IMG/VR virus record: IMGVR_UViG_3300024252_000004
Span: 310,001 to 374,000 of that record
Length of the DNA stretch: 64,000 nt
Reading direction: 5' to 3' (one strand)
Positions 3,249 to 53,362 of this stretch are shown here, one piece after another. The notes beneath the pieces are model-generated. The model made no database searches. It was not told the origin of the DNA and saw nothing but the letters and a program-made list of their open reading frames with translations. Position 1 is the stretch's first letter, and the number at the start of each line of letters is the position of its first letter. A program made the position numbers and the translations under genes.

Positions 3249-3323
3249 ATGGCTTGGTATATATGGTTAATCATAGCGATATGTTGCCTCATACTAATCT
3301 GCAAACGGCCTCCGCACATTTGA
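3249..3323 (+). CDS. 24-aa hydrophobic peptide (MAWYIWLIIAICCLILICKRPPHI)
   Basis: GGAGG RBS 6 nt upstream; translated by hand. Confidence 0.5.
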   Translation: MAWYIWLIIAICCLILICKRPPHI

Positions 3324-3330
3324 GGACCCT

Positions 3331-3567
3331 ATGTCTATTTACGCTGTAATTTTAATTTTGGTTATGATTGGGCTTATCGCCGCAGGGATTAAATTCCTTC
3401 CAGGCTATATTCATAAGATCCAGATGAATGCAAGAAAAGTTGAGCTATTGGATCTTGAGATTGAAAAGAAAAGAAGCCAGCAGGCGGACGAGGAATTGAA
3501 TAGTTATCTCAGTGATGACGAGAGAGCCGAAATGCGCCGAAAAGCGGAGCAGGCACAAAGGAGTTAA
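3331..3567 (+). CDS. small single-pass membrane protein with coiled coil
   Basis: N-terminal hydrophobic helix; GAGGA RBS; TACTAAT 39 nt upstream. Confidence 0.7.
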   Translation: MSIYAVILILVMIGLIAAGIKFLPGYIHKIQMNARKVELLDLEIEKKRSQQADEELNSYLSDDERAEMRRKAEQAQRS

Positions 3568-3569
3568 AG

Positions 3570-4220
3570 ATGAAAGTAGTATGCATATCAGATACGCACA
3601 ACAAACATGAACAAATTGAGATACCAGAGTGCGATCTGCTTTTGCATACCGGAGACTTTTCGTCCAGAGGCTATAAGCACGAGTTTCAAAACTTTGTCAA
3701 GTGGCTGGACAAACAGCCTGCAAAGCACAAAGTATTTATATCTGGCAATCACGATTACATTTGCCAAAAAGAACGAGAGTTTGTTGCGGAATTCGTAGCA
3801 GACTACGATGTTCATTACTTGCTTGATAGCTCCGTTGAAATAGAAGGTCTCAAAATCTATGGCAGCCCTTGGCAGCCTTGGTTTCACAATTGGGCCTTCA
3901 ACTTCAATAAGAATGATCATGCTCAGGCTATATCAACTTGGGCTAAAATCCCTGATGATACTGATGTATTACTTACACATGGGCCACCATACAAGGTCCT
4001 TGATAGAGTGGCGAGAGTCATGCATGCTGGAGAAGATCCGAATGTTGGGTGCAAGTTCCTTTTAGGAAGAGTCATGGAAGTTAAGCCAAAGCTTCATGTT
4101 TTCGGACATATCCACGAGGCTTATGGGCAGCTTGAGCACAACGGAACACTTTTCATTAATGCTGCGAGTTGCACCTTACAATATCAGCCAACTAACTTAG
4201 CGACAGTAACGGAGCTATGA
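3570..4220 (+). CDS. calcineurin-like metallophosphoesterase
   Basis: SDTH, HTGD, GNHD, THGPP, GHIHE motifs. Confidence 0.92.
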   Translation: MKVVCISDTHNKHEQIEIPECDLLLHTGDFSSRGYKHEFQNFVKWLDKQPAKHKVFISGNHDYICQKEREFVAEFVADYDVHYLLDSSVEIEGLKIYGSPWQPWFHNWAFNFNKNDHAQAISTWAKIPDDTDVLLTHGPPYKVLDRVARVMHAGEDPNVGCKFLLGRVMEVKPKLHVFGHIHEAYGQLEHNGTLFINAASCTLQYQPTNLATVTEL

Positions 4221-4272
4221 TGTTCTTGATCACAATGGTGAAGACGGTTGATGCCTTATGCAGGGGGAGATA

Positions 4273-4773
4273 ATGAAGACAAGAACATTTCAAGAGTACC
4301 ATAAAGAGATTATGTCTCAGAAAAGGTACGGTGAAGATACATTTAAGGATTTCATTGAAACATGTTTTAAGCATTGTCCTGACCTTTTGGCCATCAGGCT
4401 GAGAGGTTGGACTCCAAGCTTCAATGATGGTGATCCTTGCTATCACTCAGAAGATCTAAAAGTTCTTTTTCGTGACGATGTTTACGGTTTCGATTGGGCA
4501 GTTCATTTTCATGAAAAGTACGAAAGTATTTGCGAAGAAATCTTTTTAATAAAAGCGACCCCGTCTCGTTGGAACGAAAAAGAAATGCACTACGGCGGCA
4601 TGAGTCGTGAGGATATCGCTGCTCTTGGAGATTGTCCGAAAAAAAGAGTCCTTTACGCTATTCGAAATCAATTCTATGCGGAACATGCTTATGGCACAGA
4701 TTATGAGTTGATCATCGATAGGACAGAGGAAGGTACGGATATCGAGTACAGACAGTACGAATGTGGTTACTGA
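4273..4773 (+). CDS. hypothetical phage protein (WTPSFNDGDPC motif)
   Basis: GGGAG RBS; 166-aa ORF. Confidence 0.7.
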   Translation: MKTRTFQEYHKEIMSQKRYGEDTFKDFIETCFKHCPDLLAIRLRGWTPSFNDGDPCYHSEDLKVLFRDDVYGFDWAVHFHEKYESICEEIFLIKATPSRWNEKEMHYGGMSREDIAALGDCPKKRVLYAIRNQFYAEHAYGTDYELIIDRTEEGTDIEYRQYECGY

Positions 4774-4775
4774 TT

Positions 4776-5063: not shown

Positions 5064-5110
5064 GAGAACACCTAATATTTCGGGTAGGATTGTGAGTGAG
5101 GGTATCATTT

Positions 5111-5524: not shown

Positions 5525-5528
5525 TCTC

Positions 5529-5990: not shown

Positions 5991-5992
5991 AG

Positions 5993-9270: not shown

Positions 9271-9284
9271 ATGCTTCGAAATTT

Positions 9285-9310
9285 TCTAAAATTCCTGTAG
9301 GACGTTATAG
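9285..9310 (+). promoter_or_regulatory. promoter-like motif B
   Basis: TCTAA-AATTCCTGTAGGAC-GTTATAG, intergenic. Confidence 0.7.
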
Positions 9311-9353
9311 GTTTTCGAAGCGATACTTCAACCCTTAACCAAGGAAATTTAAC

Positions 9354-9913: not shown

Positions 9914-9920
9914 TACTAAT
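9914..9920 (+). promoter_or_regulatory. promoter-like motif A (TACTAAT), putative late promoter
   Basis: TACTAAT in an AT-rich gap, 39 nt before ATG 9953. Confidence 0.65.
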
Positions 9921-9952
9921 ATAAAATTGATAAAACTGAAAAAGGAGTTTAA

Positions 9953-10165
9953 ATGAATTCTAACGAGAATCGGAGCGAGGTTATCGAGTCTACTCGTAAT
10001 CTCAAGAACCTTAGTGTGACTGTACGCTCTGGCAGTCTTAGGAAGCAGAGGCTTTCTAACAATGTCTCCCTTACACGTACCCTCGATGGCGGAGAGTTTA
10101 GTACAAGACTTACCATTAGAGAGGCCCGAGCCCTTCGTGATTTCCTGAACGAAACCCTGGACTGA
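9953..10165 (+). CDS. small basic hypothetical protein
   Basis: AAGGAG RBS. Confidence 0.75.
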   Translation: MNSNENRSEVIESTRNLKNLSVTVRSGSLRKQRLSNNVSLTRTLDGGEFSTRLTIREARALRDFLNETLD

Positions 10166-10294: not shown

Positions 10295-10609
10295 TTGGAG
10301 CGTATATTGCCAAGCATTACTATTAGCAAAGAGGCCATTGAAGACATCATGTGGTCATCTGTTGGTCCATCCGATAGCGGAGCATTCATCATTGTGCATG
10401 AAGGCGAGTGGACGCAGGACGGAAAATGTCAGTATCAGGAGATTATCTTCAAAAACACTGGCGATACTAAATGCTATTCATTTAACATTTCACGTTCTGG
10501 CTCTCCATTTACGTATTGGCATTACGACACAGAGTACATGGAAGAGATGACGTGTACCGAAGTTGAAGAAGTAGAGATCATTACCAAAATGTGGAGAGCC
10601 GTAAAGTAG
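10295..10609 (+). CDS. phage hypothetical protein (SRSGSPFTYWHY motif); start may be TTG at 10307
   Basis: ORF track; GGAG precedes the TTG at 10307. Confidence 0.7.
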   Translation: MERILPSITISKEAIEDIMWSSVGPSDSGAFIIVHEGEWTQDGKCQYQEIIFKNTGDTKCYSFNISRSGSPFTYWHYDTEYMEEMTCTEVEEVEIITKMWRAVK

Positions 10610-13245: not shown

Positions 13246-13435
13246 GGAAGCTTGTTAAGAAGGCGGTGAAGGTTGTTGTTACACCAGTTGCAACAGCCGC
13301 TGTTATGTCACAGTGGGCAATTGTAATTCTTGCCCTTTATGCACAGACAATTCGTCGCAACTATGGATCTAATAAGGAAGACTAATCTAATAATGAAGTG
13401 AGTTATAGTGAACGCTCACTTCACAGGGATTAGTC

Positions 13436-15212: not shown

Positions 15213-15615
15213 GGGGGCGTTTTGGATTCGACCGGGTAACAGATAGGAATAGTGCAAGCCGATCAAGGTAACTCAGATCGTTATAAGCGTTACAAAAAAC
15301 AAACTAGTTGACGACTATTCATTCGTGTACGCAAACGCAGGCAGAGGCTTCGGCGCTCCTGTAGTAGCATACGCCTAATTCCGATTTAGGCATGTGGACT
15401 CTGTGTTCCATATATCCAAACACAGATAAGTGGTTGAACGCACTGACATAAACATTGTTCAAAAATGGAGTAGCCCGAAAGGGAGGAGGCGTCTATCATT
15501 TGGCGTCAGGGGATAAAATGAATACTTTGCCTATTTAGAGAAATGGGATAAGCTTGTGAACGACTTGAAATTGACGTTATGCGACACGAGGGTTCGACTC
15601 CCTCCGCCTCCACCA
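15213..15615 (+). ncRNA. ssrA: tmRNA
   Basis: 5' GGGGGCG..GGATTCGAC; 3' GAGGG-TTCGACT-CCCTC-CGCCTCC-A-CCA with G3.U alanine identity pair; internal tag ORF 15310-15378 (DDYSFVYANAGRGFGAPVVAYA*). Confidence 0.93.
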
Positions 15616-19131: not shown

Positions 19132-19369
19132 ATTATTCGAGTCTATTAACAAGGTGAGAGAGATTAACTCGGAGCATTGTTATCACAAGGTTCTCGTGTT
19201 TGATGAGGATGGGCATTACGAAACTCTCATGATGACGGAACACGAGTTATCTGTAATTAGACAGCGCTCAGAGAGGAACCGTGACGAGGAGCTTGTTCCT
19301 AAGTGGCATGACAAGGCTTATGTTTCTGCTGTTTTTTCGGTAAAGAGTCTATTCGCCAAAGTTTTCTAA
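19121..19369 (+). CDS. hypothetical protein
   Basis: GGAG RBS. Confidence 0.65.
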   Translation: MIGKLFESINKVREINSEHCYHKVLVFDEDGHYETLMMTEHELSVIRQRSERNRDEELVPKWHDKAYVSAVFSVKSLFAKVF

Positions 19370-19390
19370 ATTTCCCATAAGATGTTATAG
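19365..19390 (+). promoter_or_regulatory. promoter-like motif B, facing an antisense gene
   Basis: TCTAA-ATTTCCCATAAGAT-GTTATAG. Confidence 0.7.
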
Positions 19391-19408
19391 GATGACGTAG
19401 CCTTTGTT

Positions 19409-20335
19409 TTACGCGATTGAAGCCCACCAAGCTTCGGCGTCAAAGTTCTCATCTTCATCGGCTAATGGCAATTCTTCCGAATCATCAGGCGTAGGCGCCT
19501 GCTGCTCAATAAGGGAAGCAATTGCCATTTGTGCTGTACCGGTAATGAATTCAAGGTTTGGCAGATAAAGAGTCTTCATGAACTTCTCGGCAGGAGCTTC
19601 AACAGCGAGCCATAGAAGCATAGAGATACCAAAGTCTATTGCGGAGACTGTCAAGCCTCCAATTCCAAGACCTGCGAAATATCCCAATACTGTCGGCATC
19701 AATAGGAGGATATCTTTAAACCCGTCAAGAAGATTGACGACAAAAGAAATTCCTTCGTCCCACAGTAAGCTGCCAGATTTTGTAAGTTCTACAACGGTTT
19801 TGAGTTCGACTGGAGACTCGGAATACTCTTTAGCTTTGCTCATCATTTTTGCAGGCTGTAGTGTGTCCATCCAGTTAAGGCCAACGTCACCAGATTTACC
19901 CTGTACTTTTTTGAATTCCTGAAAGCCATAATACACATTCTTAATGGCTATTAAGAAACTGAATAGTGGAGCAGCTTTGCCGAGCAGAGCCATAGCTCCT
20001 GCTTCTTTAACAAAGAAATCCTCTGATGTCATATTCATATTTGACATTACAACCCTAAGCTTCTCAGCAGAATCTTTAATATCTTCAGGGTCAGCTTCTT
20101 TTAGCGCCGCTGCATCTTTAAGGTTTTTTGCAGCTTCAACGAGGTATACTATAGCTTTAGTTTGCACCTGAGTTTCGTGAGGACGTTCGATCTCATTGAG
20201 AACTGCTTTCCACGCCTCAAGGTCTCCGCCAACGATATTTGCAGACTTGATTAGCAAGTGCGTAAGCTCGTCGGCTTCGCGGTTAAGGTTGGCTTCTTTT
20301 AGGATATCAATAAGGTATTTAAGTTCTTTGTCCAC
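19409..20335 (-). CDS. putative late/virion protein with hydrophobic helices and an N-terminal 'L..L...L.......AD' helix
   Basis: AGGAG RBS; TACTAATAAAA on the minus strand at 20358-20368. Confidence 0.8.
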   Translation of the reverse strand: MDKELKYLIDILKEANLNREADELTHLLIKSANIVGGDLEAWKAVLNEIERPHETQVQTKAIVYLVEAAKNLKDAAALKEADPEDIKDSAEKLRVVMSNMNMTSEDFFVKEAGAMALLGKAAPLFSFLIAIKNVYYGFQEFKKVQGKSGDVGLNWMDTLQPAKMMSKAKEYSESPVELKTVVELTKSGSLLWDEGISFVVNLLDGFKDILLLMPTVLGYFAGLGIGGLTVSAIDFGISMLLWLAVEAPAEKFMKTLYLPNLEFITGTAQMAIASLIEQQAPTPDDSEELPLADEDENFDAEAWWASIA

Positions 20336-20369
20336 TGACTGCTCCTAAGCATAAAGGTTTTATTAGTAA

Positions 20370-21494
20370 ATGAATATAATTCAAGCCAGTAATGCTAACG
20401 TAGTAAGGGTTGCGGAGTATTTCCTACCAAAGGAAATTACAAATCAAAACTTAATAATAGCAGGTGGGTTTGCTACGTGGCTGCTATATTTGCATAAGAC
20501 CGTAGAAGATTGGGATAAGTTTTTTGCAGACTTAGATGTGAGTCTCATAAATCTTGAGGATAAACGGTTAAAGGATGAAGCGACAAAAGGTATTGCGAAA
20601 TTTGGAGATATAGATATCTGGATTCCGGAGAACCATTCTTTAAGAAAGATGAAAATAATCACAAGTCAGGAGCTTTATCCCTTTGGCCTTAAAGAAAACG
20701 CAGGACTTGTGGAGAAAAGTCTTGCTTCCGAGAAATCATTTGAGAAAAGCTTCGGCATTTCCTCTGACCTTCTGAAGGTTAGCAGATTCGCACACACATA
20801 TAGGCTTGAGCATACAGTTAAACTTTTAGGAAAAATAGCGGTTCCGTCAGTGTTCGGCTTGTTTGAGCCAATTGTAATTCCGTATAGAAAGCGAATTAAA
20901 ATGAGGAATGCTTTTCAGATTATAAGAAGAACCTGTGATTCGTTAGAGGAAGTTTTTTCTACATTTGATTTTCACCATACAAGAGCAGCCTACTACAATG
21001 GCTTACTACACTTTACAAAAAAAGCTGAGAGGACTTTCGAAGAGAAGACAATCTTTCCGACAAAGAGTTTCCTTGAGCGACACGATAGCATATCTATTAA
21101 CTCTGCCTGTAGAGCATTTAAGTATATGGAGAGGTACGGATTTGGCTTCTCAGAAGACTTGGCAGATAAGATTGCGGACCTGTATCTTCAAGTTGGAATA
21201 GCAGAGGATACTGCGGATTATGTTGGCCCTCCAAAATATGCCATCATCAATTTATTCAATGCAACGAATCTCACCCCAGAGTATGATCCAGATTATTTAA
21301 TCTTTTTTTCAGAGATCACTCCAGAAACCTTGAGTAAGGTTAAAGGTATTTATCTTAAAAGATTTCTAACATCATTTAAGACATTTTCGAGAATGTCATG
21401 CTTTAAAGATGAGTATATAGGTTTGTTGCTATGTTGCGACATGGAAGAAATAAGTAAAGTAATCGAGAGGCGACTATATGAACAATCCGACTGA
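20370..21494 (+). CDS. Pol-beta superfamily (poly(A)/CCA-adding-like) nucleotidyltransferase
   Basis: IIAGGF, GDIDIW, FSTFDF, RAFKY..YGF motif set. Confidence 0.7.
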   Translation: MNIIQASNANVVRVAEYFLPKEITNQNLIIAGGFATWLLYLHKTVEDWDKFFADLDVSLINLEDKRLKDEATKGIAKFGDIDIWIPENHSLRKMKIITSQELYPFGLKENAGLVEKSLASEKSFEKSFGISSDLLKVSRFAHTYRLEHTVKLLGKIAVPSVFGLFEPIVIPYRKRIKMRNAFQIIRRTCDSLEEVFSTFDFHHTRAAYYNGLLHFTKKAERTFEEKTIFPTKSFLERHDSISINSACRAFKYMERYGFGFSEDLADKIADLYLQVGIAEDTADYVGPPKYAIINLFNATNLTPEYDPDYLIFFSEITPETLSKVKGIYLKRFLTSFKTFSRMSCFKDEYIGLLLCCDMEEISKVIERRLYEQSD

Positions 21495-21813: not shown

Positions 21814-21862
21814 TACTAATATCATGAAGCTCATGTGAATACCCAAATCTGGAGACTATCAC

Positions 21863-24578: not shown

Positions 24579-26180
24579 ATGGGAAAAGTTGTAAAGATTG
24601 GACCTGAAGCAAGAAAAGAAATGCTTCAAGGTGTAGATATTTTAGCAAACGCCGTTAAGGCCACTCTTGGTCCGCGAGGAAGAAACGTTGCTATCGAAAG
24701 GGAATGGGGTCACCCGCTTATTACAAAAGATGGTGTGACTGTAGCTCGACAGATCAGATTGGATGATAGAATTCAGAACATGGGAGCACAGTTGGTGCGT
24801 TCGGTTGCAGCCGCAGCAAATAGCGCGGCAGGAGACGGGACAACAACTGCAACTGTTCTCGCTCAGGCAATCTACTCCAAAGGCTTAGTTCTTGTAGACG
24901 AAGAGGGACTCAACCCTGTTCTTCTTAGACGCGGCATTGACCTTGCTGTGACAAAACTTTCAAGTAGACTGAAGGGCTTATCTGCATCTGTAAGCGATGA
25001 AGCAAGCATGAGAAGTGTTGCTGTAATCTCTGCAAATAATGATAAGGTTCTCGGTGCCAAAATCGCAGAAGCTATCGCGGCAGTTGGTCAGCACGGAGTC
25101 ATTTCCGTTGAGGAAGCGACTGGAAGATCAACTGAGGTGTTCTACTCGGAAGGTATCAAGCTCGATAAGGGATGGACCTCTGAGCATTTCGTGACAAATT
25201 CTGCAAGATTTACGGCAGAATTTGATGATTGTCTTATATTTCCTTATGATGGGGCGATTTCCAGCATCACTGATGTAAGGGAAATTTTTGAGGAATTAGC
25301 CGAGCAATCCAAACCCGTTCTTTTGGTTGTAAAGCAGATCACAGATGAAGCTATTGCTCATCTTGTCTACAACAAGATTCAGGGAAATATTAGAATCGCG
25401 GTAGTTCGTTCTCCTGGGTTTGGTGATTCGAGACGTGCATTCCTCGAAGACCTTGCCATTGTTTCTGGCGGAAAGATGTTCTGTGATAATGACGGAATCG
25501 GTCTTGACGGAGCAACAGTTGCTGATCTTGGGACCGCACGCAGGGTCATCGTAAGCCAGAACAGCACAACTATAATTGAAGGTGGGGCAGATCCCAAAGA
25601 TGTTGAGGCGAGAGCCATTCAGATTAAAGAGCAGCTTACTGCTGGTGGTCAACATGATTATCAGCTTGAGATTCTAAAAAGCAGACTTGCAAGAATCACT
25701 GGCTCGGCAGCGATTTTTAAGGTCGGCGGAAAATCTGAAGCTGAAATGAGAGAGAGAAAGGACAGAGTGGAAGATGCTATCAACGCTGTACGTTCAGCGC
25801 TTGAAGAAGGTGTAGTTCCCGGTGGTGGCTCCGCACTAATTCATGCCCTTCCAGTCCTTGACGAGATTGAGACAGATGGCCTTCTTCCTGAAGAGGTGGC
25901 CGGCATTGGAATTATCAGAGAGGCAGTTAAGGCCCCATTTTATCAGATTCTTGATAACGCCGGAGTCACTGGTGCTGATGATTTTGTTGAGCAGATTTTG
26001 AATTCTGATGAGCCAAGCGGTTATGATGCTCTTAATCTTGAGTTTGTAACTAACATGTTAGACAATGGGATTATGGATCCTTGTAAAGTTGTAAGAAGCT
26101 CTTTGGAGCATGCTGCATCAGCCAGTGGAACACTGCTGACGACAGAGGTTGCAATTTACGAAACTGAAACGGAGAGATAA
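24579..26180 (+). CDS. groEL: chaperonin GroEL
   Basis: TLGPRGRNV, ITKDGVTVA, GDGTTTATVLA, EGVVPGGG. Confidence 0.98.
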   Translation: MGKVVKIGPEARKEMLQGVDILANAVKATLGPRGRNVAIEREWGHPLITKDGVTVARQIRLDDRIQNMGAQLVRSVAAAANSAAGDGTTTATVLAQAIYSKGLVLVDEEGLNPVLLRRGIDLAVTKLSSRLKGLSASVSDEASMRSVAVISANNDKVLGAKIAEAIAAVGQHGVISVEEATGRSTEVFYSEGIKLDKGWTSEHFVTNSARFTAEFDDCLIFPYDGAISSITDVREIFEELAEQSKPVLLVVKQITDEAIAHLVYNKIQGNIRIAVVRSPGFGDSRRAFLEDLAIVSGGKMFCDNDGIGLDGATVADLGTARRVIVSQNSTTIIEGGADPKDVEARAIQIKEQLTAGGQHDYQLEILKSRLARITGSAAIFKVGGKSEAEMRERKDRVEDAINAVRSALEEGVVPGGGSALIHALPVLDEIETDGLLPEEVAGIGIIREAVKAPFYQILDNAGVTGADDFVEQILNSDEPSGYDALNLEFVTNMLDNGIMDPCKVVRSSLEHAASASGTLLTTEVAIYETETER

Positions 26181-26479: not shown

Positions 26480-26515
26480 CAAAAGCCTGATAGCAATTTA
26501 GCTGTCGGGCTTTTG
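26480..26515. terminator. intrinsic (bidirectional-looking) terminator
   Basis: CAAAAGCCTGATAGC/GCTGTCGGGCTTTTG stem. Confidence 0.8.
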
Positions 26516-26553: not shown

Positions 26554-28113
26554 GTGCGTAAGCTTGCAGACTTAGAAGTTACAGAGAAGACAGATCCTGC
26601 TACCGGAAATAAAATCCGTATTAGCACGACTGCTCGTCTTGCGTTGAGAATTATGTTTCCAAAGTTTACTGAAGAAAGGAATGCGAGACTAAATGATCGA
26701 ATGGCATTCATGTTCAGTAATTCAGCAGGCAACGTTGTTCACCGTTTCAAATTAGGGAACAAAGATACCGGAGCATGGCGCCCAGCGGAACCAGATTCTG
26801 GTGAACAGAATAATAGAGAAGTTGCTGAAATTAGGTCAGGCCCAGGCGGAGACTTTTTCTTCATTTCTGCTATTAGGCAGGGATACATTGATATCTTAAC
26901 ATTACAAGATAATTGGAAGCAGGGAAAGCCTAATCAAGGTGGATCAAAAGGTGCTGGCGCAGGAGCCGGTGATGGAGATGTATCTTTGGCGAGTCTGAAT
27001 ATCGACATGAGTATATTCGGAGCTACTAATAAAACGAATTTGGACAGAAACAGGAGACATAACATGTCAGCATTGCGCATTCTTGCAGATTTAGCAAACA
27101 AGTTGGACAGTTTTGGTGAGACCAAGGCTGCTGATGAAGTAACCAAGATGATAGAGAAGAGAGCTAGGTGGCCTTTTGGAAAGGCGGACGAAGAGGAAGA
27201 ATTTCCTGCTGCCCCTCCAGTCCCTAAGCCTCCTGTGTCTCCACAGTCTTCTCCATTTTTAAGAGGAACAATTCCTCCTGCGCCGCCTATGAACCCTGTT
27301 GTTACGACCAGTCCGGAAGGTTTCAGCGATGCTCCAGTTGCTGAACCAGCAGAGTCAAGAGTAGTTGGAAAGCTTGGTCCGATTAGGCCAGACAAAGATC
27401 CTTACTCTTACGAATTCCTTCCTTCCGAAGGTGTCTTCAGAGTTTCCAGCTACACTTATGGGCCAGGAGCGGCCCCTAACCCAAGGGCAGAGAGAGCCGT
27501 TGGCGCACATATTACAAGAGAAAATGCAAGAGCTTGGGCTGTATTGTCCGAGTATGTTCCAGAAGGGGACAAGTCCCCTTCCGAAGGGAGACATCTTCTC
27601 ACAGAGTCTACAGGTGATCCTGCAAGAGACTGGAAAGAAGCACAGCTTCAGTTTGCTGGCTGGGTTAACTCAGGACACTTTGGTACTGAACTTCAGAAGA
27701 AGTTTAGACTTGCAGACCCGGGTATGCCAATGCGTCAGCTTATGGATGCAGAGCTTTCTCCAGAGAGTGCGGGATTCCTTGTTGAAAGGTTTGAGGCAAT
27801 GATTGCTGGAAATGTTCTTTCGGATCTAAAAGATCCTGAGACTCTCCTCAGATATGCTCTTGAGCTTCAGAACTATGCTCATCTTGCTAACAGGGCAAGG
27901 GCAGTAGGTCAGCAGTCAATGAGAGAATCTGAGACGGTCATGTCTCCGGGTGGATACCCATCATCATACCCATCATCATCAGAGGCTGAAGATTTCACAC
28001 TGGCATCTATGGACTCAATAGAGGATATAAGAAAGAAGGCATCTGCTAACGTAGATAGGCTTGCAGCACTTTTCACAGTCCCAGGTGGAAGCGGTCCTTT
28101 CGGAAGGGACTGA
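26554..28113 (+). CDS. putative late/virion protein; nested in-frame start at 27064
   Basis: GAGGTG RBS then GTG (MRKLA); TTCTAATAATA at 26520; internal TACTAAT 27024 + AGGAG + ATG 27064. Confidence 0.8.
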   Translation: MRKLADLEVTEKTDPATGNKIRISTTARLALRIMFPKFTEERNARLNDRMAFMFSNSAGNVVHRFKLGNKDTGAWRPAEPDSGEQNNREVAEIRSGPGGDFFFISAIRQGYIDILTLQDNWKQGKPNQGGSKGAGAGAGDGDVSLASLNIDMSIFGATNKTNLDRNRRHNMSALRILADLANKLDSFGETKAADEVTKMIEKRARWPFGKADEEEEFPAAPPVPKPPVSPQSSPFLRGTIPPAPPMNPVVTTSPEGFSDAPVAEPAESRVVGKLGPIRPDKDPYSYEFLPSEGVFRVSSYTYGPGAAPNPRAERAVGAHITRENARAWAVLSEYVPEGDKSPSEGRHLLTESTGDPARDWKEAQLQFAGWVNSGHFGTELQKKFRLADPGMPMRQLMDAELSPESAGFLVERFEAMIAGNVLSDLKDPETLLRYALELQNYAHLANRARAVGQQSMRESETVMSPGGYPSSYPSSSEAEDFTLASMDSIEDIRKKASANVDRLAALFTVPGGSGPFGRD

Positions 28114-29739: not shown

Positions 29740-29756
29740 GCGTTAGAGCATATTTT

Positions 29757-29782
29757 TCCAAATTTCCCACAGGGTGGTATAA
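29757..29782 (+). promoter_or_regulatory. promoter-like motif B
   Basis: TCCAA-ATTTCCCACAGGGT-GGTATAA just after the terminator. Confidence 0.7.
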
Positions 29783-29856
29783 GGGAGCATGTCCGTAGCT
29801 CTTAGTAGTTGCCTTGTATTCGCTTCGGTACTATTATCGCTCATGGAGGAATTTAC

Positions 29857-30867
29857 ATGTTGTTATCCGCAGATGTTGTAGTGGGGCTCGCTTGGGGCGA
29901 TGAAGCAAAAGGAAAGATCACCTCAGCCTTGGCAGCTACAGGGCAGTACGACGCCGTGGCTCGCTGGGCCGGAGGCAATAACGCAGGCCATACGGTCTAC
30001 GTCAATGGCGAAAAATACAAAACACACCTTGTTCCAAGCGGCGTATTCCACGGAATGCTTTCCATCGTTGGTCCCGGCTGTGTATTGCATCCAGAAGAAT
30101 TTGAAAAAGAATTGGCTTACCTCGCAGGACACGGATTCGATACCTCTCTTGTGAAGGTATCTCCGAATTGCCACATTGTTCAAGACGAGCATATTGAGTT
30201 TGACAAGCAGAACCTTGCAAAGAAGCTTGGCACAACCTCAAAAGGTATTGCACCGAGTTACGCAGCTAAGGCGGCAAGAACAGGTCTTCTTGCCAAAGAC
30301 TATTACGAAGGCAGTGACATCCTATGGGACGGTCAGCTTAGCGGTGTATTATTGTGTGAAGGAGCGCAGGGGGCTTGGTTAGATATTGATCACGGGAATT
30401 ATCCCTATGTGACCTCAAGCATTACACTTGCCTATGGAGCTTGCAGTATAGGCTTCGCACCACAGCTCATTAAGAGCATCTGGGGCGCTGCCAAAATTTA
30501 TGACACAAGAAGCGGAGAAGATCCTATTTTTCCTGCGTCACTACTTGATGACCCTATGCTGTCAAAGGTTGGGGAAATTGGGGCCGAATATGGTGTGACC
30601 ACAGGGCGCAGAAGAAAGGTAAATTGGCTTGATGTTGATATGCTGATTAAGTCTATCAATTTGACTGGATGCACACACGTTGTTGTTAGCAAATGTGATG
30701 TATTGGAAGAGGCCGGAGTTTACAGGATGTATTGTAGAGGGATTCAGAACGAGCTTTCTGAGTTCGAAAGCATTACCGATATGACCGGAGTGCTGGAGAC
30801 TCTTCTTAGAAAGAATTGTTCCCTTCTCAAGAGAGTGATCTTTTCCTCTTCACCGGAGAATATATGA
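29857..30867 (+). CDS. purA: adenylosuccinate synthetase (short form)
   Basis: GLAWGDEAKGK, GGNNAGHT, EGAQG, YPYVTSS, GVTTGRRR; GGAGG RBS. Confidence 0.95.
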   Translation: MLLSADVVVGLAWGDEAKGKITSALAATGQYDAVARWAGGNNAGHTVYVNGEKYKTHLVPSGVFHGMLSIVGPGCVLHPEEFEKELAYLAGHGFDTSLVKVSPNCHIVQDEHIEFDKQNLAKKLGTTSKGIAPSYAAKAARTGLLAKDYYEGSDILWDGQLSGVLLCEGAQGAWLDIDHGNYPYVTSSITLAYGACSIGFAPQLIKSIWGAAKIYDTRSGEDPIFPASLLDDPMLSKVGEIGAEYGVTTGRRRKVNWLDVDMLIKSINLTGCTHVVVSKCDVLEEAGVYRMYCRGIQNELSEFESITDMTGVLETLLRKNCSLLKRVIFSSSPENI

Positions 30868-33259: not shown

Positions 33260-34303
33260 ATGAAATTAAGAAGAGCTTTAGCATTTGATGACGTGCTTCT
33301 TGTTCCAAGAAAATCAGAGATACCTTCCAGGCTTGCCGTTGATCCTTCAGTAGACGTTGGTGGAATCAAATTAGGCATTCCCCTTATTTCCTCTCCAATG
33401 GATACTGTAACAGAAGGACTTATGGCAAAACAACTTGGGCTGCTTGGCGGTCTGGGGATAATTCATAGGTACTGTTCTGTTAGTGAACAAATTGCTCACT
33501 TAAGAATACCAATTGCTGCCGGAGTATATGGAGGCTTTGCAATCGGAGTTGGAGCAGAAGCGGAAGAAAGATTCTCCATGATTCTGGAAGAATATGGCAG
33601 CAGCCTTGATGTTGTATGCATTGACATTGCGAATGGCCATAGCACGCTTATGGAGAGGACCATTAAGAAAGTTAGAGATATGGCTCCAGATATTTCAATC
33701 ATGGCAGGAAATGTTGCTACCAGAGACGGATACAGGTTTCTCGCAGATCTCGGAGTAAATTCTGTCAGGGTAGGTATCGGCGGAGGAAGCATCTGCAAAA
33801 CGCGAATTCAGACAGGGTTCGGCGTTCCTACATTTTCTTCTCTTCTTTGGGCCGCAGACGCTAAAGAGTCTGGTAAATACGAGGCGTCCATCATTGCAGA
33901 TGGAGGCATTAGGCACCCCGGAGATTTAGCTAAAAGCATTGCGGCCGGCGCAGATGCTGTTATCTGTGGTAGCATCTTTGCTGGGAGCAAAGAAGCCCCT
34001 GGTGATGTAATCACATGGACAGATGGCATTGCCTATAAGAAATACAGGGGAATGGCATCGGAAGAGATTCAGGTAGAGAAGAGGGGCGGAATGAAGCCGG
34101 GAACCTGCGCAGAAGGAACGTCTACTCTTGTTAGATATGAAGGCTCCATGAAGAGAGTCACTGAGGAGTTTGAGGGCGGAATTAGGTCCGCCTTAACTTA
34201 CAACGGTTCTTGGGATATTCCACATTTCCAGGTGACCGCAGAATTTATTGAGATTACAGATTCTGGATTAAGAGAGTCTCACTCTCACGGAACAAGGAAA
34301 TAA
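33260..34303 (+). CDS. IMP dehydrogenase/GMP reductase family (no CBS domains)
   Basis: FDDVLLVP, SSPMDTVT, DIANGHS, GIGGGSICKTR, IADGGI, YRGMAS; guaB versus guaC not resolved. Confidence 0.93.
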   Translation: MKLRRALAFDDVLLVPRKSEIPSRLAVDPSVDVGGIKLGIPLISSPMDTVTEGLMAKQLGLLGGLGIIHRYCSVSEQIAHLRIPIAAGVYGGFAIGVGAEAEERFSMILEEYGSSLDVVCIDIANGHSTLMERTIKKVRDMAPDISIMAGNVATRDGYRFLADLGVNSVRVGIGGGSICKTRIQTGFGVPTFSSLLWAADAKESGKYEASIIADGGIRHPGDLAKSIAAGADAVICGSIFAGSKEAPGDVITWTDGIAYKKYRGMASEEIQVEKRGGMKPGTCAEGTSTLVRYEGSMKRVTEEFEGGIRSALTYNGSWDIPHFQVTAEFIEITDSGLRESHSHGTRK

Positions 34304-34634: not shown

Positions 34635-34638
34635 TTTT

Positions 34639-34664
34639 TCTAAGCTACTCGTAGGAGGTTATAG
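34639..34664 (+). promoter_or_regulatory. promoter-like motif B
   Basis: TCTAA-GCTACTCGTAGGAG-GTTATAG. Confidence 0.65.
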
Positions 34665-34721
34665 GAGGTCGTGCAGGAAATGCGTCTTCATCCCCCTACT
34701 CACAAAGGAGTTATATAGCTT

Positions 34722-43337: not shown

Positions 43338-43367
43338 GATATCTTTGCCTACGAATGAGCGAAGTTT

Positions 43368-43393
43368 TCTAAATTTCCCACAAGGGGTTATAA
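43368..43393 (+). promoter_or_regulatory. promoter-like motif B
   Basis: TCTAA-ATTTCCCACAAGGG-GTTATAA. Confidence 0.7.
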
Positions 43394-43438
43394 GTATGCA
43401 GGTAAGGTTTTTCGCCCCTGCTGGCCAAGGGGAGCAAC

Positions 43439-49472: not shown

Positions 49473-49515
49473 ATCTACTAATAAAAGTCGTTTCCTAGTT
49501 GAGGATCAATAAAAA

Positions 49516-50400
49516 ATGACTTTACTTCTTACAATGACAGAGAGTGATAGCTCAATTATATCTGGTGTACCAGAGTACGTTGAGTTTGAGACCAATGAAC
49601 CGGCCACTGTTTTCTATACAGTGGACGGGACCGGACCAGATGCTGCGGATTTAATCGCGGTTGGCAAGGTATATCTTCCGACTCATGGTCAAGCATTCAC
49701 TTTAAGTGCTGTGGCTATTTCTGGTTCAGAGGAATCTGATATCCTTGAGGAGGATTACTCAACGGATTCTTCGGCTTTGGCGAGGACGAGGAATGTAAGT
49801 GGTGAAGGTATCGTTATTCTTCCGGCAGGAGAGTATGACAATTTTGTTGATCACCTCTCTGAGGACACTAATGGTCAGGAGTCTCAAAGAACCACTATAG
49901 AGTTTTTAGATCTTATGATCATAACAAGCACTACCAATAGTCTTGGAGAGCCATTAGCCAGCGGTAGTTTGAGTACTGAAACGACTCATGATTTCATCAA
50001 CATTCCAGATAGGAGTGGTGGCACGGAGATACCTGATATCTCTTCGGTTCATGACAGCGATTTTTTCCCTAATGCAAAGGTGATAGTTATCGATGGTTCG
50101 ACTGAGGCTCTTTTAGATTCTCAAGCTGTTAGAATCATTAATAGGCCACACGGTACGATTGACCCATCGAGTAGTTTTTACAACGATCACATCATTGAGC
50201 GTCCATTGGTTTCTGGCAATTTTGTTAGAGCGATGTACAATCCGAAAACAGGGAAAGCGGTTTTTTATTATAGAGAGAGTCGAGACAATAGGTGGATTAA
50301 ATCTGTTCAATCGGTTCAGCCAAAATGTATAAAAGCCGAGTCCAAACCGGGATTTGTTTTCAAGTGGATTGAGAGCAGATCGATGTCCAAGATTTATTGA
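49516..50400 (+). CDS. putative late structural protein with a chitobiase/FN3-associated Ig-like domain
   Basis: ATVFYTVDGTGP motif; TACTAATAAAA at 49476, 40 nt upstream. Confidence 0.7.
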   Translation: MTLLLTMTESDSSIISGVPEYVEFETNEPATVFYTVDGTGPDAADLIAVGKVYLPTHGQAFTLSAVAISGSEESDILEEDYSTDSSALARTRNVSGEGIVILPAGEYDNFVDHLSEDTNGQESQRTTIEFLDLMIITSTTNSLGEPLASGSLSTETTHDFINIPDRSGGTEIPDISSVHDSDFFPNAKVIVIDGSTEALLDSQAVRIINRPHGTIDPSSSFYNDHIIERPLVSGNFVRAMYNPKTGKAVFYYRESRDNRWIKSVQSVQPKCIKAESKPGFVFKWIESRSMSKIY

Positions 50401-50408
50401 GGAAAAAC

Positions 50409-51185
50409 ATGTTAAAGTTATCAGCATCATCAATTGGGTGTTTTCAAAAATGCCCAAAGCAGTATCACTATAGATACATCGTTAAGCCAGACATTGAGGC
50501 AAAGGACTGGTCTTTCCTTGAGTTTGGTAAATGCGCTCACGAAGCGTTAGAAAATTTCCATAAGTATTTAATGGACAACGTTGTGGAACCTGAGAAGTAC
50601 AAGTATCTCATGAGAGACTCTTTGAAGGCCGCAGTTAAGAATTACAATGCGCAGATTCTTAAGCCAGATTTTCCCGAACTTAAGCAAGTGCTTCAGAATT
50701 ACCTGGACATGATTAAGAGAGAGGGGCTGCCACCTGTAGTTGATGTGGAGCGAAGTTTCAAATTTAAGCTCGACGGCAACCTATTAAGAGGATTCATCGA
50801 TAGGACCGATGTGATCGAGCCGGGCTACTACCATGTAGTTGACTATAAAACAAACAAAAACCCGAAATACCTAAAGCCTTTTCAGTTACTCTTATATGGC
50901 TTGGCATTGAAGGAACTCTACCCAGATGTAGAACGGATAAGAGGTTCGTATTGCTTACTCAAGCACAACTCAAGATTGAAAACCTGGGAGTTCTCAGAGC
51001 GAGATCTTCAGAAGACTCGGGAGACGATTGCCAAAGTCGGAACCGATATCACTCTTGGGGAGAATTGGGAAAAGAAACCAACCATCCTCTGCAACTGGTG
51101 CGATTACCAATCAATTTGCCAAGGCCCATCCTTAGAGTTAGACACAGCAGGCCAAAATTGGGTAGGGGACAACATTTTCAAGTAG
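50409..51185 (+). CDS. PD-(D/E)XK Cas4/RecB-like exonuclease
   Basis: LSASSI..CPK.Y, GFIDR.D, VDYKT, QLLLY, LCNWCDY..IC. Confidence 0.9.
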   Translation: MLKLSASSIGCFQKCPKQYHYRYIVKPDIEAKDWSFLEFGKCAHEALENFHKYLMDNVVEPEKYKYLMRDSLKAAVKNYNAQILKPDFPELKQVLQNYLDMIKREGLPPVVDVERSFKFKLDGNLLRGFIDRTDVIEPGYYHVVDYKTNKNPKYLKPFQLLLYGLALKELYPDVERIRGSYCLLKHNSRLKTWEFSERDLQKTRETIAKVGTDITLGENWEKKPTILCNWCDYQSICQGPSLELDTAGQNWVGDNIFK

Positions 51186-51193
51186 GAGAATAA

Positions 51194-51961
51194 ATGGACG
51201 AGTTAACAGAAGAATTGAACGAAGAGCTGAATAAGATTGAGAACGAAATAGAGGTTGCTAAAGAAGGGAAGAAAGCTTCTTTCGAGGGCATAGTTAGAGT
51301 ATATGACGAGACGTTCTATGTGAACACCGAAACCGGTGTTGGTTTGGATAGCGTGCTAAAGAAGATTGAGCCGCTCTTGAATAAGATGTCTTCCAAGACA
51401 TATATTGCTGGATATACCTTTGAGGATATCAAACAAGAATTAACCATTATGGCGATCCAGGGGGTCTGTTCTTACAACCCTGCACGAGGAACAAAGCTTA
51501 GTTCATTCCTTCAGACTCATCTTAAGAATAAGCTTATCTCTAAGTTAAGAAGCGTTAATAAAATGTCCAATGATTCTTTTGCGCTATATGAGAAGAAGGG
51601 TTCTAATGTTGGTGGCGGTAAGATCAGAAAGGTAAGGGAAGAGATTCTGTTTAGTGCCTGTACCCCAGATAGTGTTGTAGACCCATCTATGATGTTCGAG
51701 AATACTGTCGCAGAGGAAGAGGGACTGTACGGAAAGACTGGACCATCGTTTGCTGATAAGGATTTTCAGCTTGCGCTTGAAAGTCTTGAGGGTGAAATTG
51801 ATGAAGACACTATCACTATCATGAAGCTCATCTATTACGAAGATTACCCAATTAAAAAGGCAGCAGCAGTTGTAGGATTGACGGGATGGGCCGCAAGTAT
51901 GCGACTCAAGAAGCTTACTGAGAACGAGTGCTTCATGGATGCCTTCGGAGATATGGTATAA
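51194..51961 (+). CDS. phage RNA polymerase sigma factor (sigma70 regions 2 and 4)
   Basis: FEDIKQEL..YNPARGTKLSSFL..LKNKL; C-terminal HTH YYEDYPIKKAAAVVGLT..RLKKL. Confidence 0.8.
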   Translation: MDELTEELNEELNKIENEIEVAKEGKKASFEGIVRVYDETFYVNTETGVGLDSVLKKIEPLLNKMSSKTYIAGYTFEDIKQELTIMAIQGVCSYNPARGTKLSSFLQTHLKNKLISKLRSVNKMSNDSFALYEKKGSNVGGGKIRKVREEILFSACTPDSVVDPSMMFENTVAEEEGLYGKTGPSFADKDFQLALESLEGEIDEDTITIMKLIYYEDYPIKKAAAVVGLTGWAASMRLKKLTENECFMDAFGDMV

Positions 51962-51967
51962 AAGTGA

Positions 51968-53362
51968 ATGGCCGTAGTAACAGACAACGACATCTTGAGG
52001 TACATAGATACTGAAAAAGATCTTTCCAGGTTCAATATAAAGACCCTAGAAAGGCTTAAGGATATCTCAGCCTCCAAGAGACGAATTCTCGAAATAGAAA
52101 GAGAGTTCGTTTCTCTTCCATTGGATCAATGGGAGTTTGAGGATGTCGCGGATGTTGCTGCGGCCATTTCTATTTATAGGTCTTCTCGTAGCCTTTTCTA
52201 TAAAACCTATGGAGTGAAGAAGCCAAAAAGCCTTACCAAGAAAGAATTGGCAGAAAGGTTGAATATTAAAATTGACTTCATTCAAGATGCTGCCAACGAG
52301 TTCACAGGTAGAAAGGTTGAAGAGATTAATCTTGTTCAGGATGAGGAGCTTTTTTATGAACTCGGCAAGCACATGGCGCGACGGGGGAGAAAAAGGTTAC
52401 AAACCGTTGTGAAGGAACTTGAGCCGCTTTCATTAGATGAGCTTAATAAGCTGGAACCAATAATGATCTCTAAAGATAGAGCAAGAAGACAAGCGACCCT
52501 ATACTCCCTTGGTCTATACTTCAGAGAAGAACTGTCCAAAATTAAAATTGAAGCTTCGTTAACGAAGGAAAGTCTTATGTCGTGGATTGATAGATTGGAT
52601 TCTATAATGGATAATGTTCCTGCCAACCTTTTCAAAAACTATAACGTTTCTCTTGAAATGCTTCCGTCAGAATTTGATTCCGGAATGGGTCAGAATAGTT
52701 ATTTTCGAAAGACTCATCGTCTAAGGAACATTTTAGATTTTGATAATATGGTAAGAGACCTGTCGGATGCTCCTTCCTTATTTAACAATGGCGATTTCGA
52801 CTTCGCAGAGCCTATGGTGGGCAGGCTCACTCCGGACGAGAAGAAGGTTATAGGTGCGGGCTTTTCAAAAGAGAAAAGAAGGAAATCAAAAACTAAAACC
52901 TTCGGAGTTATGCTGCCTATTCCGAGATTAGGAAATGAGAAAATGAGCCTCATGCACGCACACATACGCGCGTGTGGACAAAATATAACCCCTCTTTTTG
53001 ATGAATGTATTTCAAACATCAGGGTTTCGTATGAAGATGAGCAAGTCTATTTTAAAGCTTTAATGATGAAACCTTTATGGACAGTCTTGGATTCTTCTTC
53101 TAATAACGTAAGATATGGTATGGTACTGTCCAGACTTATCGGTTATGAGTTTCGGCATGTTGAAGAGTTTGATAAGGTAAAGGTCATCGATTTGGTTAAT
53201 GAATGCAGAAGCGATTTTATGTCTCTTGACTTAGGCAGTGTAGCTTTTGTTCCAAAGACCAGATCCGAAGAAGATGCTTTTCATAAAATCAAACCATGGA
53301 TCAATGAGATAGCCTCCCAGCTCAGGGATGACTATTACACTACTACTAATGATAGTTGTTAG
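51968..53362 (+). CDS. hypothetical protein
   Basis: 464-aa ORF. Confidence 0.8.
   Translation: MAVVTDNDILRYIDTEKDLSRFNIKTLERLKDISASKRRILEIEREFVSLPLDQWEFEDVADVAAAISIYRSSRSLFYKTYGVKKPKSLTKKELAERLNIKIDFIQDAANEFTGRKVEEINLVQDEELFYELGKHMARRGRKRLQTVVKELEPLSLDELNKLEPIMISKDRARRQATLYSLGLYFREELSKIKIEASLTKESLMSWIDRLDSIMDNVPANLFKNYNVSLEMLPSEFDSGMGQNSYFRKTHRLRNILDFDNMVRDLSDAPSLFNNGDFDFAEPMVGRLTPDEKKVIGAGFSKEKRRKSKTKTFGVMLPIPRLGNEKMSLMHAHIRACGQNITPLFDECISNIRVSYEDEQVYFKALMMKPLWTVLDSSSNNVRYGMVLSRLIGYEFRHVEEFDKVKVIDLVNECRSDFMSLDLGSVAFVPKTRSEEDAFHKIKPWINEIASQLRDDYYTTTNDSC

What the first reader, a model, noticed from the sequence alone, without database searches (positions are those of the whole stretch)
3292..53350. 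TACTAAT(AAAA): single-box putative late promoter
Seen at 3292, 9914, 21814, 27024, 49476, 53344 and on the minus strand at 20362-20368. Variants occur at 13380/13386, 26520 and 28499. Each lies 33-56 nt before a start codon, five of them at 39-40 nt, with no evident -35 box. Downstream genes are mostly structural-looking or orphans, not metabolic or replication genes. Established analogy: the T4 late promoter TATAAATA is a single box read by gp55. Inference: the late regulon of this phage.
Basis: partly seen in the sequence, partly recalled or inferred. Interest (0 to 1): 0.62.

Follow-up and report, generated by a model that had tools for sequence, protein, structure and literature searches.

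The report
Single-box phage promoter motif TACTAWTA
An 8-base box, TACTAATA or TACTATTA, sits just upstream of about two dozen genes of an uncultured 395-kb jumbo phage and is kept at the same genes in distant relatives, so it is very probably a phage-specific promoter with no -35 partner; that it is the "late" class is plausible but not shown.

Summary
In the window alone TACTAAT is not over-represented (12 found, 7.6 expected). The window is bases 310001-374000 of a 395,127-bp phage genome, and there TACTAATA is the most enriched of all 8-mers upstream of gene starts. All 15 copies lie upstream of a gene on the same strand, 14 of them 30-60 nt before a start codon. The real motif is TACTAWTA. 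No -35 or other flanking position is conserved.

The box is kept before orthologous genes in relatives whose proteins are only 25-66% identical. All 17 related contigs with a complete tail-sheath 5' end carry it 39-63 nt before the ATG, and the only other conserved island there is the ribosome-binding site.

Targets include the sheath and tube unit, but also a tubulin-like gene, a GroEL unit, an HNH endonuclease, glycosyltransferases and the unit holding the phage's only sigma factor.

A second, two-box promoter class heads small ORFs, a tRNA and nucleotide-metabolism genes. No gp55, T4-type clamp or phage RNA polymerase was found.

Verdict: a real single-box promoter class. Late timing and the sigma that reads it are inferred.

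The parts
9914..9921 (+). TACTAATA box, 39 nt before the ATG at 9953 (70-aa ORF)
   Evidence: Good SD (AAGGAG). The ORF has homologues in G001 and G002, but no box was found within 260 nt upstream of them.
20361..20368 (-). TACTAATA box, 33 nt before the GTG at 20335 (308-aa gene on the minority strand)
   Evidence: The gene is inverted relative to its neighbours, so it needs its own promoter. The G001 orthologue carries TACTAATT 32 nt upstream.
21814..21821 (+). TACTAATA box, 49 nt before the ATG at 21863. It heads a unit of 316, 114, 234 and 229 aa, then GroEL (24579-26180) and a 94-aa gene, ending at the terminator 26480-26515
   Evidence: Cpn60; terminator. The G001 orthologue has TACTAATA 56 nt upstream.
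27024..27031 (+). TACTAATA box, 40 nt before the ATG at 27064 (349-aa orphan, followed by a 478-aa ORF as called)
   Evidence: The syntenic G001 homologue (23% identity) has TACTAATA about 59 nt upstream. No family or atlas hit for the protein.
29829..29836 (+). TACTATTA box, 28 nt before the ATG at 29857 (PurA-like adenylosuccinate synthetase). It lies downstream of a two-box class A promoter whose -10-like part is at 29776
   Evidence: Not conserved in G001 or G002, so this is the weakest of the consensus sites.
49476..49483 (+). TACTAATA box, 40 nt before the ATG at 49516. It heads a unit of a 294-aa protein (weak, sub-threshold match to a carbohydrate-binding/Fn3-associated domain), a PD-(D/E)XK/Cas4-like nuclease, the sigma factor and a 464-aa ORF
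   Evidence: The G001 orthologue has TACTATTA 21 nt before its ATG. Not found in G002.
53344..53351 (+). TACTAATG, an off-consensus box, 55 nt before the ATG at 53399 (2027-aa orphan)
   Evidence: Position 8 = G is otherwise not seen at sites near starts. The position is syntenically conserved: TACTAATA lies 21 nt before the homologous gene in G002 and G003, and TACTAATT lies about 43 nt upstream in G001.
3292..3299 (+). TACTAATC, an off-consensus box, 39 nt before the ATG at 3331 (78-aa orphan)
   Evidence: Only 1 of 7 TACTAATC copies genome-wide lies near a start. No orthologue was available to test. Status uncertain.
10318..10325 (+). TACTATTA, 76 nt before a possible start at 10394. Status uncertain
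   Evidence: It may lie inside an ORF and there is no comparative support.
51194..51961 (+). The only sigma-70-family gene in the genome (255 aa, region 2 plus a region 4.2 helix-turn-helix). Candidate reader of the box
   Evidence: PF04542 at 26.8-29.6 bits, above its cut-off. TIGR02937 aligns over residues 53-242. A conserved C-terminal HTH is visible in alignment A1. The PDB profile hits are sigma factors only. No paralogue in the genome.

Best explanation
TACTAWTA is the -10-type recognition box of a phage-specific promoter class that works without a sequence-specific -35 element.

By analogy with T4 late promoters, whose box spans -13 to -6, transcription would start about 6 nt after the last A. 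That gives 5' leaders of roughly 15-45 nt that carry the Shine-Dalgarno.

About 22-25 such promoters in the 395-kb genome head compact units. Several of these are closed by intrinsic terminators.

The most likely reader is the host RNA polymerase core carrying the phage's single sigma-70-family factor (window 51194-51961). That gene can first be reached by read-through from a two-box 'class A' promoter at window 43365-43394. It then has a TACTAATA box of its own, which would give positive feedback.

Timing is probably middle to late.

Shown here: the motif, its strand and position bias, its conservation across relatives, the identity of some targets, and the presence of the sigma gene.
For: (1) An unbiased k-mer scan ranks TACTAATA first of all 8-mers upstream of starts, with 13 observed against 0.62 expected. 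13 of 15 copies lie 25-70 nt before a called start. The other two are also upstream and co-oriented. None is antisense or inside a gene, although about 8 copies are expected from base composition.

(2) The motif is tight: only the A/T change at position 6 is tolerated. No flanking column from -50 to +44 carries information apart from the SD region.

(3) Phylogenetic footprint:
- In G001 (335 kb, GC 0.34, proteins 25-66% identical), 8 of the 13 target genes with a homologue there keep a TACTAWTW box upstream.
- TACTAATW is enriched near starts in G001, 12 observed against 3.1 expected.
- All 17 related IMG/VR contigs with an intact sheath 5' end keep the box 39-63 nt before the ATG. The rest of the spacer is free to vary except for CGGAGG.

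(4) Four credible inverted, minority-strand genes, which must have their own promoter, carry the box 33-38 nt upstream: genome 98844, 223381, 288212 and 330368.

(5) The units are bounded by terminators. These follow the tube gene at 19782, the tubulin gene at 96373, the 764-aa gene at 128043 and the HNH gene at 231571, and there is one at window 26480-26515.

(6) The box often starts 3-10 nt after the previous stop codon, which leaves no room for a free -35 element.

(7) Machinery:
- There is one phage sigma with regions 2 and 4.
- No RNAP beta-subunit domain was found (PF00562).
- No T7-type RNAP was found (PF00940; the controls for that search were silent, so this negative is weak).
- Canonical sigma-70, Bacteroidetes-type and T4 TATAAATA motifs are not enriched.

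(8) Precedent: phiEco32 gp36, a phage sigma with sigma2-like and sigma4-like domains, uses middle and late promoters whose only consensus is AATGTA centred at -11.5 (PMC12276001). The T4 late box TATAAATA lies at -13 to -6 (PMC1524935).
Against: There are no transcript 5' ends.

In G001, G002 and G003 some boxes end only 13 nt before the ATG. A T4-like start would then leave an 8-nt leader and, at one G001 site, would cut the SD.

The sigma has a well-conserved region 4 helix-turn-helix. That fits a two-box promoter such as class A better than a box-only promoter.

The targets are functionally mixed: tubulin-like, GroEL, HNH, PurA-like and glycan enzymes. The capsid, portal and terminase genes were not located, so 'late' rests mainly on the sheath and tube unit.

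Five of the 13 target genes with a G001 homologue lack the box upstream there.
Confidence: 0.72

Rival explanations
1. The box is an early promoter read by unmodified host RNA polymerase, acting as a -10-only or extended -10-like element. The phage sigma, expressed from it, reads the two-box class A promoters instead.
For: The sigma gene lies in a unit headed by the box in both G000 and G001. The sigma has both region 2 and region 4. Class A has a strict -35-like and -10-like pair with fixed spacing and often a CGT in its -10 part, as ECF-type promoters do.
Against: Class A heads small orphan ORFs, a tRNA and nucleotide-metabolism and repair operons, which is a typical early or middle set. The box heads the sheath and tube unit. 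The box does not look like any known primary-sigma consensus, and TATAAT-type sites are not enriched. G002 lacks the box before its sigma unit. The box is identical across phages of GC 0.34-0.44, which probably have different hosts, while class A differs between G000 and G001.
Confidence: 0.13
2. The box is the DNA site of a phage transcription factor that activates or represses a nearby core promoter. One candidate is the very conserved 153-aa sigma-region-4/LuxR-type HTH protein at genome 383932-384393.
For: That protein is the best-conserved protein between G000 and G001, at 75% identity. It passes the Pfam cut-offs for Sigma70_r4, Sigma70_r4_2 and GerE. A conserved binder would fit a conserved site.
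Against: The box has no dyad or direct repeat. It is strictly co-oriented with the gene. No second conserved element that could serve as the core promoter exists within 50 nt on either side. In the sheath footprint nothing else except the SD is conserved. If the box sat at -35, the start would fall on or beyond the ATG, yet these genes have SD leaders.
Confidence: 0.08
3. The box acts in RNA (UACUAAUA), as an intercistronic processing site or a 5'-UTR element controlling stability or translation.
For: It lies at a fairly constant distance before the SD and ATG, often directly after the previous stop codon inside long same-strand gene arrays. It is AU-rich, like many endonuclease sites.
Against: Four credible inverted genes have the box as the only recognisable upstream signal and would still need a promoter. 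Box-to-SD spacing varies freely across relatives, with box-to-ATG distance 21-63 nt and no conserved pairing partner. No Rfam family overlaps the sites.
Confidence: 0.05
4. The pattern is a chance or compositional effect of AT-rich, stop-containing words in intergenic DNA.
For: The 7-mer count in the window is not above shuffles. The word contains TAA and is AT-rich.
Against: It ranks first of 65,536 8-mers for upstream enrichment, at p about 2e-13. One-mismatch neighbours of the same composition are at background. The bias is strand-specific. The box is retained in 17 of 17 sheath upstream regions of diverged relatives.
Confidence: 0.02

Closest known systems
Phage T4 late promoters (TATAAATA at -13 to -6, read by gp55 with gp33 and the gp45 clamp)
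   Same: Both are a single 8-bp AT-rich box with no -35 element, placed a few tens of nt before the start codon. 6 of 8 positions are identical (TAnnAATA). Both head a tail structural unit, and both also head a homing-type HNH endonuclease gene. T4 facts come from PMC1524935 and the T4 record annotation. That T4 homing endonucleases use late promoters is from my own knowledge.
   Different: The consensus differs at positions 3 and 4, and TATAAATA itself is not enriched here. No gp55-family protein (phrog_234, phrog_12791) and no T4-type clamp (phrog_223) is detectable. The only sigma present has a region 4, which gp55 lacks. The target set is more mixed.
phiEco32 middle and late promoters read by the phage sigma gp36 (consensus AATGTA centred at -11.5)
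   Same: A phage-encoded sigma with sigma2-like and sigma4-like domains works with host core RNAP. The promoters are defined by one short -10-region consensus (PMC12276001). The sigma here has the same two-domain layout.
   Different: The consensus is different. The phage type is unrelated: a 77-kb podovirus there, a 395-kb myovirus-like jumbo phage here. In phiEco32 the gp36 C-terminal domain still makes functionally important -35 contacts and needs the cofactor gp79. Neither could be tested here. That this sigma reads this box is inferred, not shown.
Extended -10 / '-10-only' bacterial and phage promoters (TGnTATAAT)
   Same: These work without a -35 hexamer. Extra upstream bases of the -10 region carry specificity. 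TAC-TAATAW can be read as three extra bases plus a TAATAW hexamer.
   Different: There is no TG. The hexamer matches TATAAT at only 4 of 6 positions. TGnTATAAT and TATAAT are not enriched upstream of genes in this genome.

Membership tests
T4-type late transcription system | Single conserved box of about 8 bp in the -10 region, with no -35 element | tested here: met
   The information profile of 22 aligned sites shows only the 8-9 bp box. The sheath footprint shows the same. The position relative to the true transcription start could not be tested.
T4-type late transcription system | Consensus TATAAATA | tested here: not met
   The motif is TACTAWTA, 6 of 8 identical. TATAAATA has 11 copies, 2 near starts against 0.7 expected, so it is not enriched.
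T4-type late transcription system | gp55-family sigma encoded by the phage | tested here: not met
   phrog_234 and phrog_12791, both of which T4 gp55 hits, give no match in the genome even at E <= 10. Very remote homologues cannot be excluded.
T4-type late transcription system | gp45-type sliding clamp acting as mobile enhancer | tested here: not met
   phrog_223, which T4 gp45 hits, gives no match in the genome.
T4-type late transcription system | gp33 co-activator | not tested
T4-type late transcription system | Drives virion structural genes after replication onset | tested here: inconclusive
   The sheath and tube unit is headed by the box. Many other targets are non-structural or unknown. 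No expression data.
Phage-sigma single-element promoters (phiEco32 gp36 type) | Phage encodes a sigma with sigma2-like and sigma4-like domains | tested here: met
   Window 51194-51961 matches PF04542 and TIGR02937 and has a conserved C-terminal HTH.
Phage-sigma single-element promoters (phiEco32 gp36 type) | That sigma initiates at the box | not testable with these tools
   This needs in vitro transcription or transcriptomics. The only indirect hints are that it is the sole sigma gene and that it sits in a box-headed unit.
Phage-sigma single-element promoters (phiEco32 gp36 type) | Consensus AATGTA at -11.5 | tested here: not met
   The box is TACTAWTA. The phiEco32 consensus is taken from PMC12276001.
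Canonical sigma-70 promoter | TTGACA-N16-18-TATAAT pair | tested here: not met
   No -35 signal at the box sites. Canonical pairs are not enriched upstream of genes or in the window.

The most novel reading that the evidence does not exclude
A whole clade of uncultured marine-type jumbo phages (sheath proteins 45-66% identical, GC 0.34-0.44) uses a strictly conserved -10-only promoter, TACTAWTA. The box is nearly the T4 late box, but the phages have no gp55, gp33 or gp45. It would be read by a two-domain (sigma2 plus sigma4) phage sigma, perhaps helped by the ultra-conserved 153-aa sigma4-like protein. That would be an independent origin of T4-style single-box late transcription, with an autoregulated sigma fed by a separate two-box early/middle class.
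Probability: 0.35. Interest if true: 0.55.

Novelty: new member of a known kind. Interest (0 to 1): 0.45.

Why it matters
The phage has no cultured relative: megablast with 20 kb of the window found nothing in the phage collection, and tblastn with the sheath protein found only a 28%-identical match over its C-terminal quarter. Most of the proteins checked here have no recognised family.

A validated promoter code would divide the 395-kb genome into transcription units and temporal classes, using TACTAWTA together with the two-box class A. It would also mark which orphan genes are co-regulated with the tail sheath, and give a directly testable sigma-promoter pair.

The box is invariant across a diverged clade. 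It could therefore serve as an annotation signal for related metagenomic contigs, and as a compact orthogonal promoter and sigma part if the pairing is confirmed.

It is not a new principle. Phage-specific single-element promoters are well known from T4 and phiEco32.

Tried and rejected
- Megablast of 20 kb of the window against the phage collection: no match.
- Conserved -35 or any other flanking element at 22 aligned sites: none.
- Canonical sigma-70, extended -10, Bacteroidetes (TAnnTTTG) and T4 TATAAATA motifs: not enriched.
- Phage RNA polymerases: no match for PF00562. No match for PF00940, but its controls were silent, so this negative is weak. No NADFDGD-like motif in any ORF.
- gp55 and gp45 families: none.
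- Sigma paralogues, by a profile search of the six-frame translation: none.
- Function of the orphan targets: no informative Pfam or PHROG match for most, no usable protein-atlas hit for the 349-aa and 316-aa proteins, and no tblastn hit for the 2027-aa and 1516-aa proteins.
Whether head genes carry the box is unknown.
- Literature search for TACTAATA as a promoter: only unrelated eukaryotic hits among those listed.
- PurZ (2-aminoadenine) reading of the PurA-like gene: rejected, because the GDE motif is retained and the PurA models score far higher.
- Avoidance of the box inside genes: suggestive in G000 (0 copies in coding sequence against roughly 7 expected) but absent in G001, so not claimed.

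Full report
**Context.** The window is bases 310001-374000 of a 395,127-bp virus record that CheckV rates complete. Its GC content is 0.44, and about 80% of the ORFs I called lie on the + strand. It has no close relative among 50,697 deposited phage genomes. Its tail-sheath protein finds only a 28%-identical match over 28% of its length, to an annotated sheath gene. I placed the whole genome in the Python box, made simple gene calls with SD-guided starts, and used those for the genome-wide tests.

**The observation.**
- Distances to the start codon are 33-55 nt. Four exact sites and the 28499 variant sit at 39-40 nt.
- Counted in the window, the 7-mer is unremarkable: 12 found against 7.6 +/- 2.9 expected.
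- The signal is positional. Among all 8-mers, TACTAATA is the most enriched in the -80..-15 region of 564 starts: 13 observed, 0.62 expected, p about 2e-13.
- Of the 15 copies in the genome, 13 lie 25-70 nt before a called start. One more, at window 9914, precedes a 70-aa ORF that my caller missed but that has homologues in two relatives. The last lies 299 nt before a tubulin-like gene, just after a terminator-like hairpin.
- None is antisense or inside a gene.
- Only one variant is tolerated: TACTATTA, with 5 of 13 copies near starts. All other single changes are at the background rate of about 3%.
- The base after the box is A or T in 20 of 22 sites. Nothing else from -50 to +44 carries information except the purine-rich SD zone. 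The motif is therefore TACTAWTA(W). It is single-box, and the AAAA tail is incidental.

**Conservation.** Using the phage sigma protein as a probe, I found relatives and fetched two in bulk: G001 (335 kb, terminal repeats, GC 0.34) and G002 (a 132-kb fragment).
- G000 and G001 share 133 reciprocal best hits, mostly 25-66% identical, in broad synteny.
- Of the 13 box-headed genes with a G001 homologue, 8 keep a TACTAWTW box upstream. These are the sheath gene, the 228-aa, 764-aa, 308-aa (inverted), 316-aa, 349-aa and 294-aa genes, and the 2027-aa gene.
- By my estimate a chance match has a probability of roughly 0.015 per gene.
- TACTAATW is also enriched near starts in G001: 12 observed, 3.1 expected.
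- A scan with the sheath protein returned 29 related loci. All 17 with an intact 5' end carry the box 39-63 nt before the ATG (16 have TACTAATA, one has TACTATTA). These span sheath identities of 45-63% and GC of 0.34-0.44.
- In the alignment of these regions, the only conserved islands between the upstream stop codon and the ATG are the box and the SD CGGAGG.

This is a clean phylogenetic footprint.

**What the box heads.**
- The best-defined unit runs box, tail sheath, tube-like virion protein, terminator. The sheath call rests on a sub-threshold match to the PF17482 C-terminal domain (21 bits against a 26.9-bit cut-off) and on tblastn to an annotated sheath gene. The tube-like protein matches phrog_985. 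Baseplate genes lie in the same roughly 55-kb module.
- Other units:
  - a 1516-aa orphan followed by glycosyltransferases;
  - a GT8 glycosyltransferase;
  - a sulfotransferase with a sugar epimerase;
  - a tubulin/TubZ-like gene;
  - a 764-aa protein closed by a strong terminator, just before topoisomerase I;
  - an HNH endonuclease;
  - a four-gene unit that runs into GroEL;
  - a PurA-like gene;
  - the unit made of a 294-aa protein, a Cas4-like nuclease, the sigma factor and a 464-aa ORF;
  - several small orphans.

- Four credible inverted genes, which must have their own promoter, carry the box 33-38 nt upstream.
- The box commonly begins a few bases after the preceding stop codon. That explains why there is no room for a free -35 element.

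**A second promoter class.** The same k-mer analysis exposed a roughly 30-bp, two-box element: TTTTCTAA, 14 nt, then GTTATAG, with a partly conserved spacer.
- A variant family lies in a region of small genes at 144-158 kb.
- There are about 25 credible sites.
- It heads small ORFs, tRNA-Tyr, the MoxR-VWA-M16 peptidase-ThyX operon, the FtsK-SbcD-SbcC operon and, upstream of a TACTATTA box, the PurA-like gene.
- G001 has an analogous but different element: ACTCTAAAAA, about 15 nt, then AGTAATA.
- This gene content looks early or middle, which by contrast makes the box class the later one.
- Several replication genes (DNA polymerase, DnaB, primase, UvsX, RNR) have neither element nearby. The programme therefore has further, unidentified signals.

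**Machinery.**
- The genome has exactly one sigma-70-family gene, at window 51194-51961. Its alignment with four relatives shows an invariant region 2 core and a typical region 4.2 helix-turn-helix. The sigma-factor matches of its PDB profile cover those same two regions.
- There is no detectable RNAP beta-subunit domain, T7-type RNAP, gp55 family or T4-type clamp.
- A 153-aa protein with a sigma-region-4/LuxR-type HTH is the most conserved protein between G000 and G001.
- Canonical sigma-70, Bacteroidetes-type and T4 late consensus sequences are not enriched.

**Mechanism proposed.** The box is a -10-type element.
- If it is placed as in T4, where TATAAATA spans -13 to -6 (PMC1524935), transcripts start about 6 nt after the box and carry the SD.
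- Because the phage has one sigma and two promoter classes, the simplest scheme has three steps. First, host holoenzyme reads class A, possibly with the 153-aa HTH protein. Second, read-through from the class A promoter at window 43365-43394 reaches the sigma gene; no convincing + strand terminator intervenes. Third, the sigma reads TACTAWTA, including the box in front of its own unit.
- phiEco32 gp36 shows that a sigma with sigma2-like and sigma4-like domains can use promoters with only a -10-region consensus (PMC12276001).

The reverse assignment, in which the box is read by the host and class A by the phage sigma, is the main rival. It fits the sigma's intact region 4 and the ECF-like look of class A, but it fits the gene content poorly. 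An operator for the HTH protein and an RNA-level signal are less likely, for the reasons given under the rival explanations.

**Weak points.**
- There are no transcript data.
- A few relatives place the box only 13 nt before the ATG.
- Head genes were not found, so 'late' rests mostly on the sheath and tube unit and on the contrast with class A.
- 5 of the 13 G001 homologues lack the box upstream.

**Verdict.** The single-box promoter reading is well supported. 'Late regulon read like T4 gp55' is supported in architecture, unproven in timing, and not supported in machinery. It is a new consensus of a known kind of element, and of moderate interest.

Noticed in passing
window 9282-9311, 19362-19391, 29754-29783, 34636-34665, 43365-43394 (about 25 credible sites genome-wide): A second promoter-like class with two boxes: TTTTCTAA, 14 nt, GTTATAG(G), with a partly conserved spacer. 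It heads small ORFs, tRNA-Tyr, and the MoxR-ThyX, FtsK-SbcCD and PurA-like units. G001 has an analogous but different version: ACTCTAAAAA, about 15 nt, AGTAATA.
   Followed up: partly
window 19362-19391 (+): A class A promoter points into the 3' end of the inverted 308-aa gene (19409-20335, - strand), which is itself headed by a TACTAATA box. This could be an antisense or convergent transcription arrangement.
   Followed up: no
genome 383932-384393 (L023:3932-4393): A 153-aa protein with a sigma-70 region 4 / LuxR-type HTH. It is the most conserved protein between G000 and G001 (75% identity) and lies next to the primase and UvsX genes. It is a candidate transcription co-factor.
   Followed up: partly
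window 15213-15615; genome about 159-316 kb: The phage encodes a tmRNA (Rfam 81 bits) and about 45 tRNAs. One has anticodon CTA (genome 302460-302537), a possible amber suppressor. Coding density under the standard code is normal, so recoding was not pursued.
   Followed up: no
genome 106542-113036 (L009): A phage copy of the bacterial PrkA kinase, DUF444 and SpoVR trio. An intein with a LAGLIDADG domain sits in SpoVR and another in the ribonucleotide reductase large subunit (113807-116989).
   Followed up: no
window 24579-26180 and genome 379379-381049: Two GroEL-type chaperonin genes in one phage genome.
   Followed up: no
genome 94900-96342: A tubulin/TubZ-like gene (PF00091, PF22453). A TACTAATA box lies 299 nt upstream and a terminator lies downstream.
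   Followed up: partly
window 29857-30867: A short (336-aa) adenylosuccinate synthetase that hits a PHROG annotated as a 2-amino-adenine (PurZ-type) pathway enzyme. It keeps the PurA GDE motif and scores far better on PurA models, so it is PurA-like and not PurZ. An IMPDH/GMP reductase gene follows at 33260-34303.
   Followed up: yes
genome 144000-158500: A region of small genes on both strands with repeated blocks of about 50 bp: GGGGAGAAAA, then GGGGTGAAAA, then AACTCATAAGAYGTTATAGAG. It looks like an early region with reiterated strong promoters.
   Followed up: no
G001 (L062-L078) 470-2800, 19270-20450, 295540-296620: Tandem paralogous genes of about 190 aa in relative G001, whose conserved 3' ends and junctions dominate its upstream k-mer statistics.
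   Followed up: no
window 60913-64000 (gene runs to genome 375688): A 1591-aa DNA polymerase (phrog_405). A weak endonuclease-family match (phrog_4645, E 1e-5) falls between the N- and C-terminal polymerase matches, so it probably carries an inserted mobile element.
   Followed up: no
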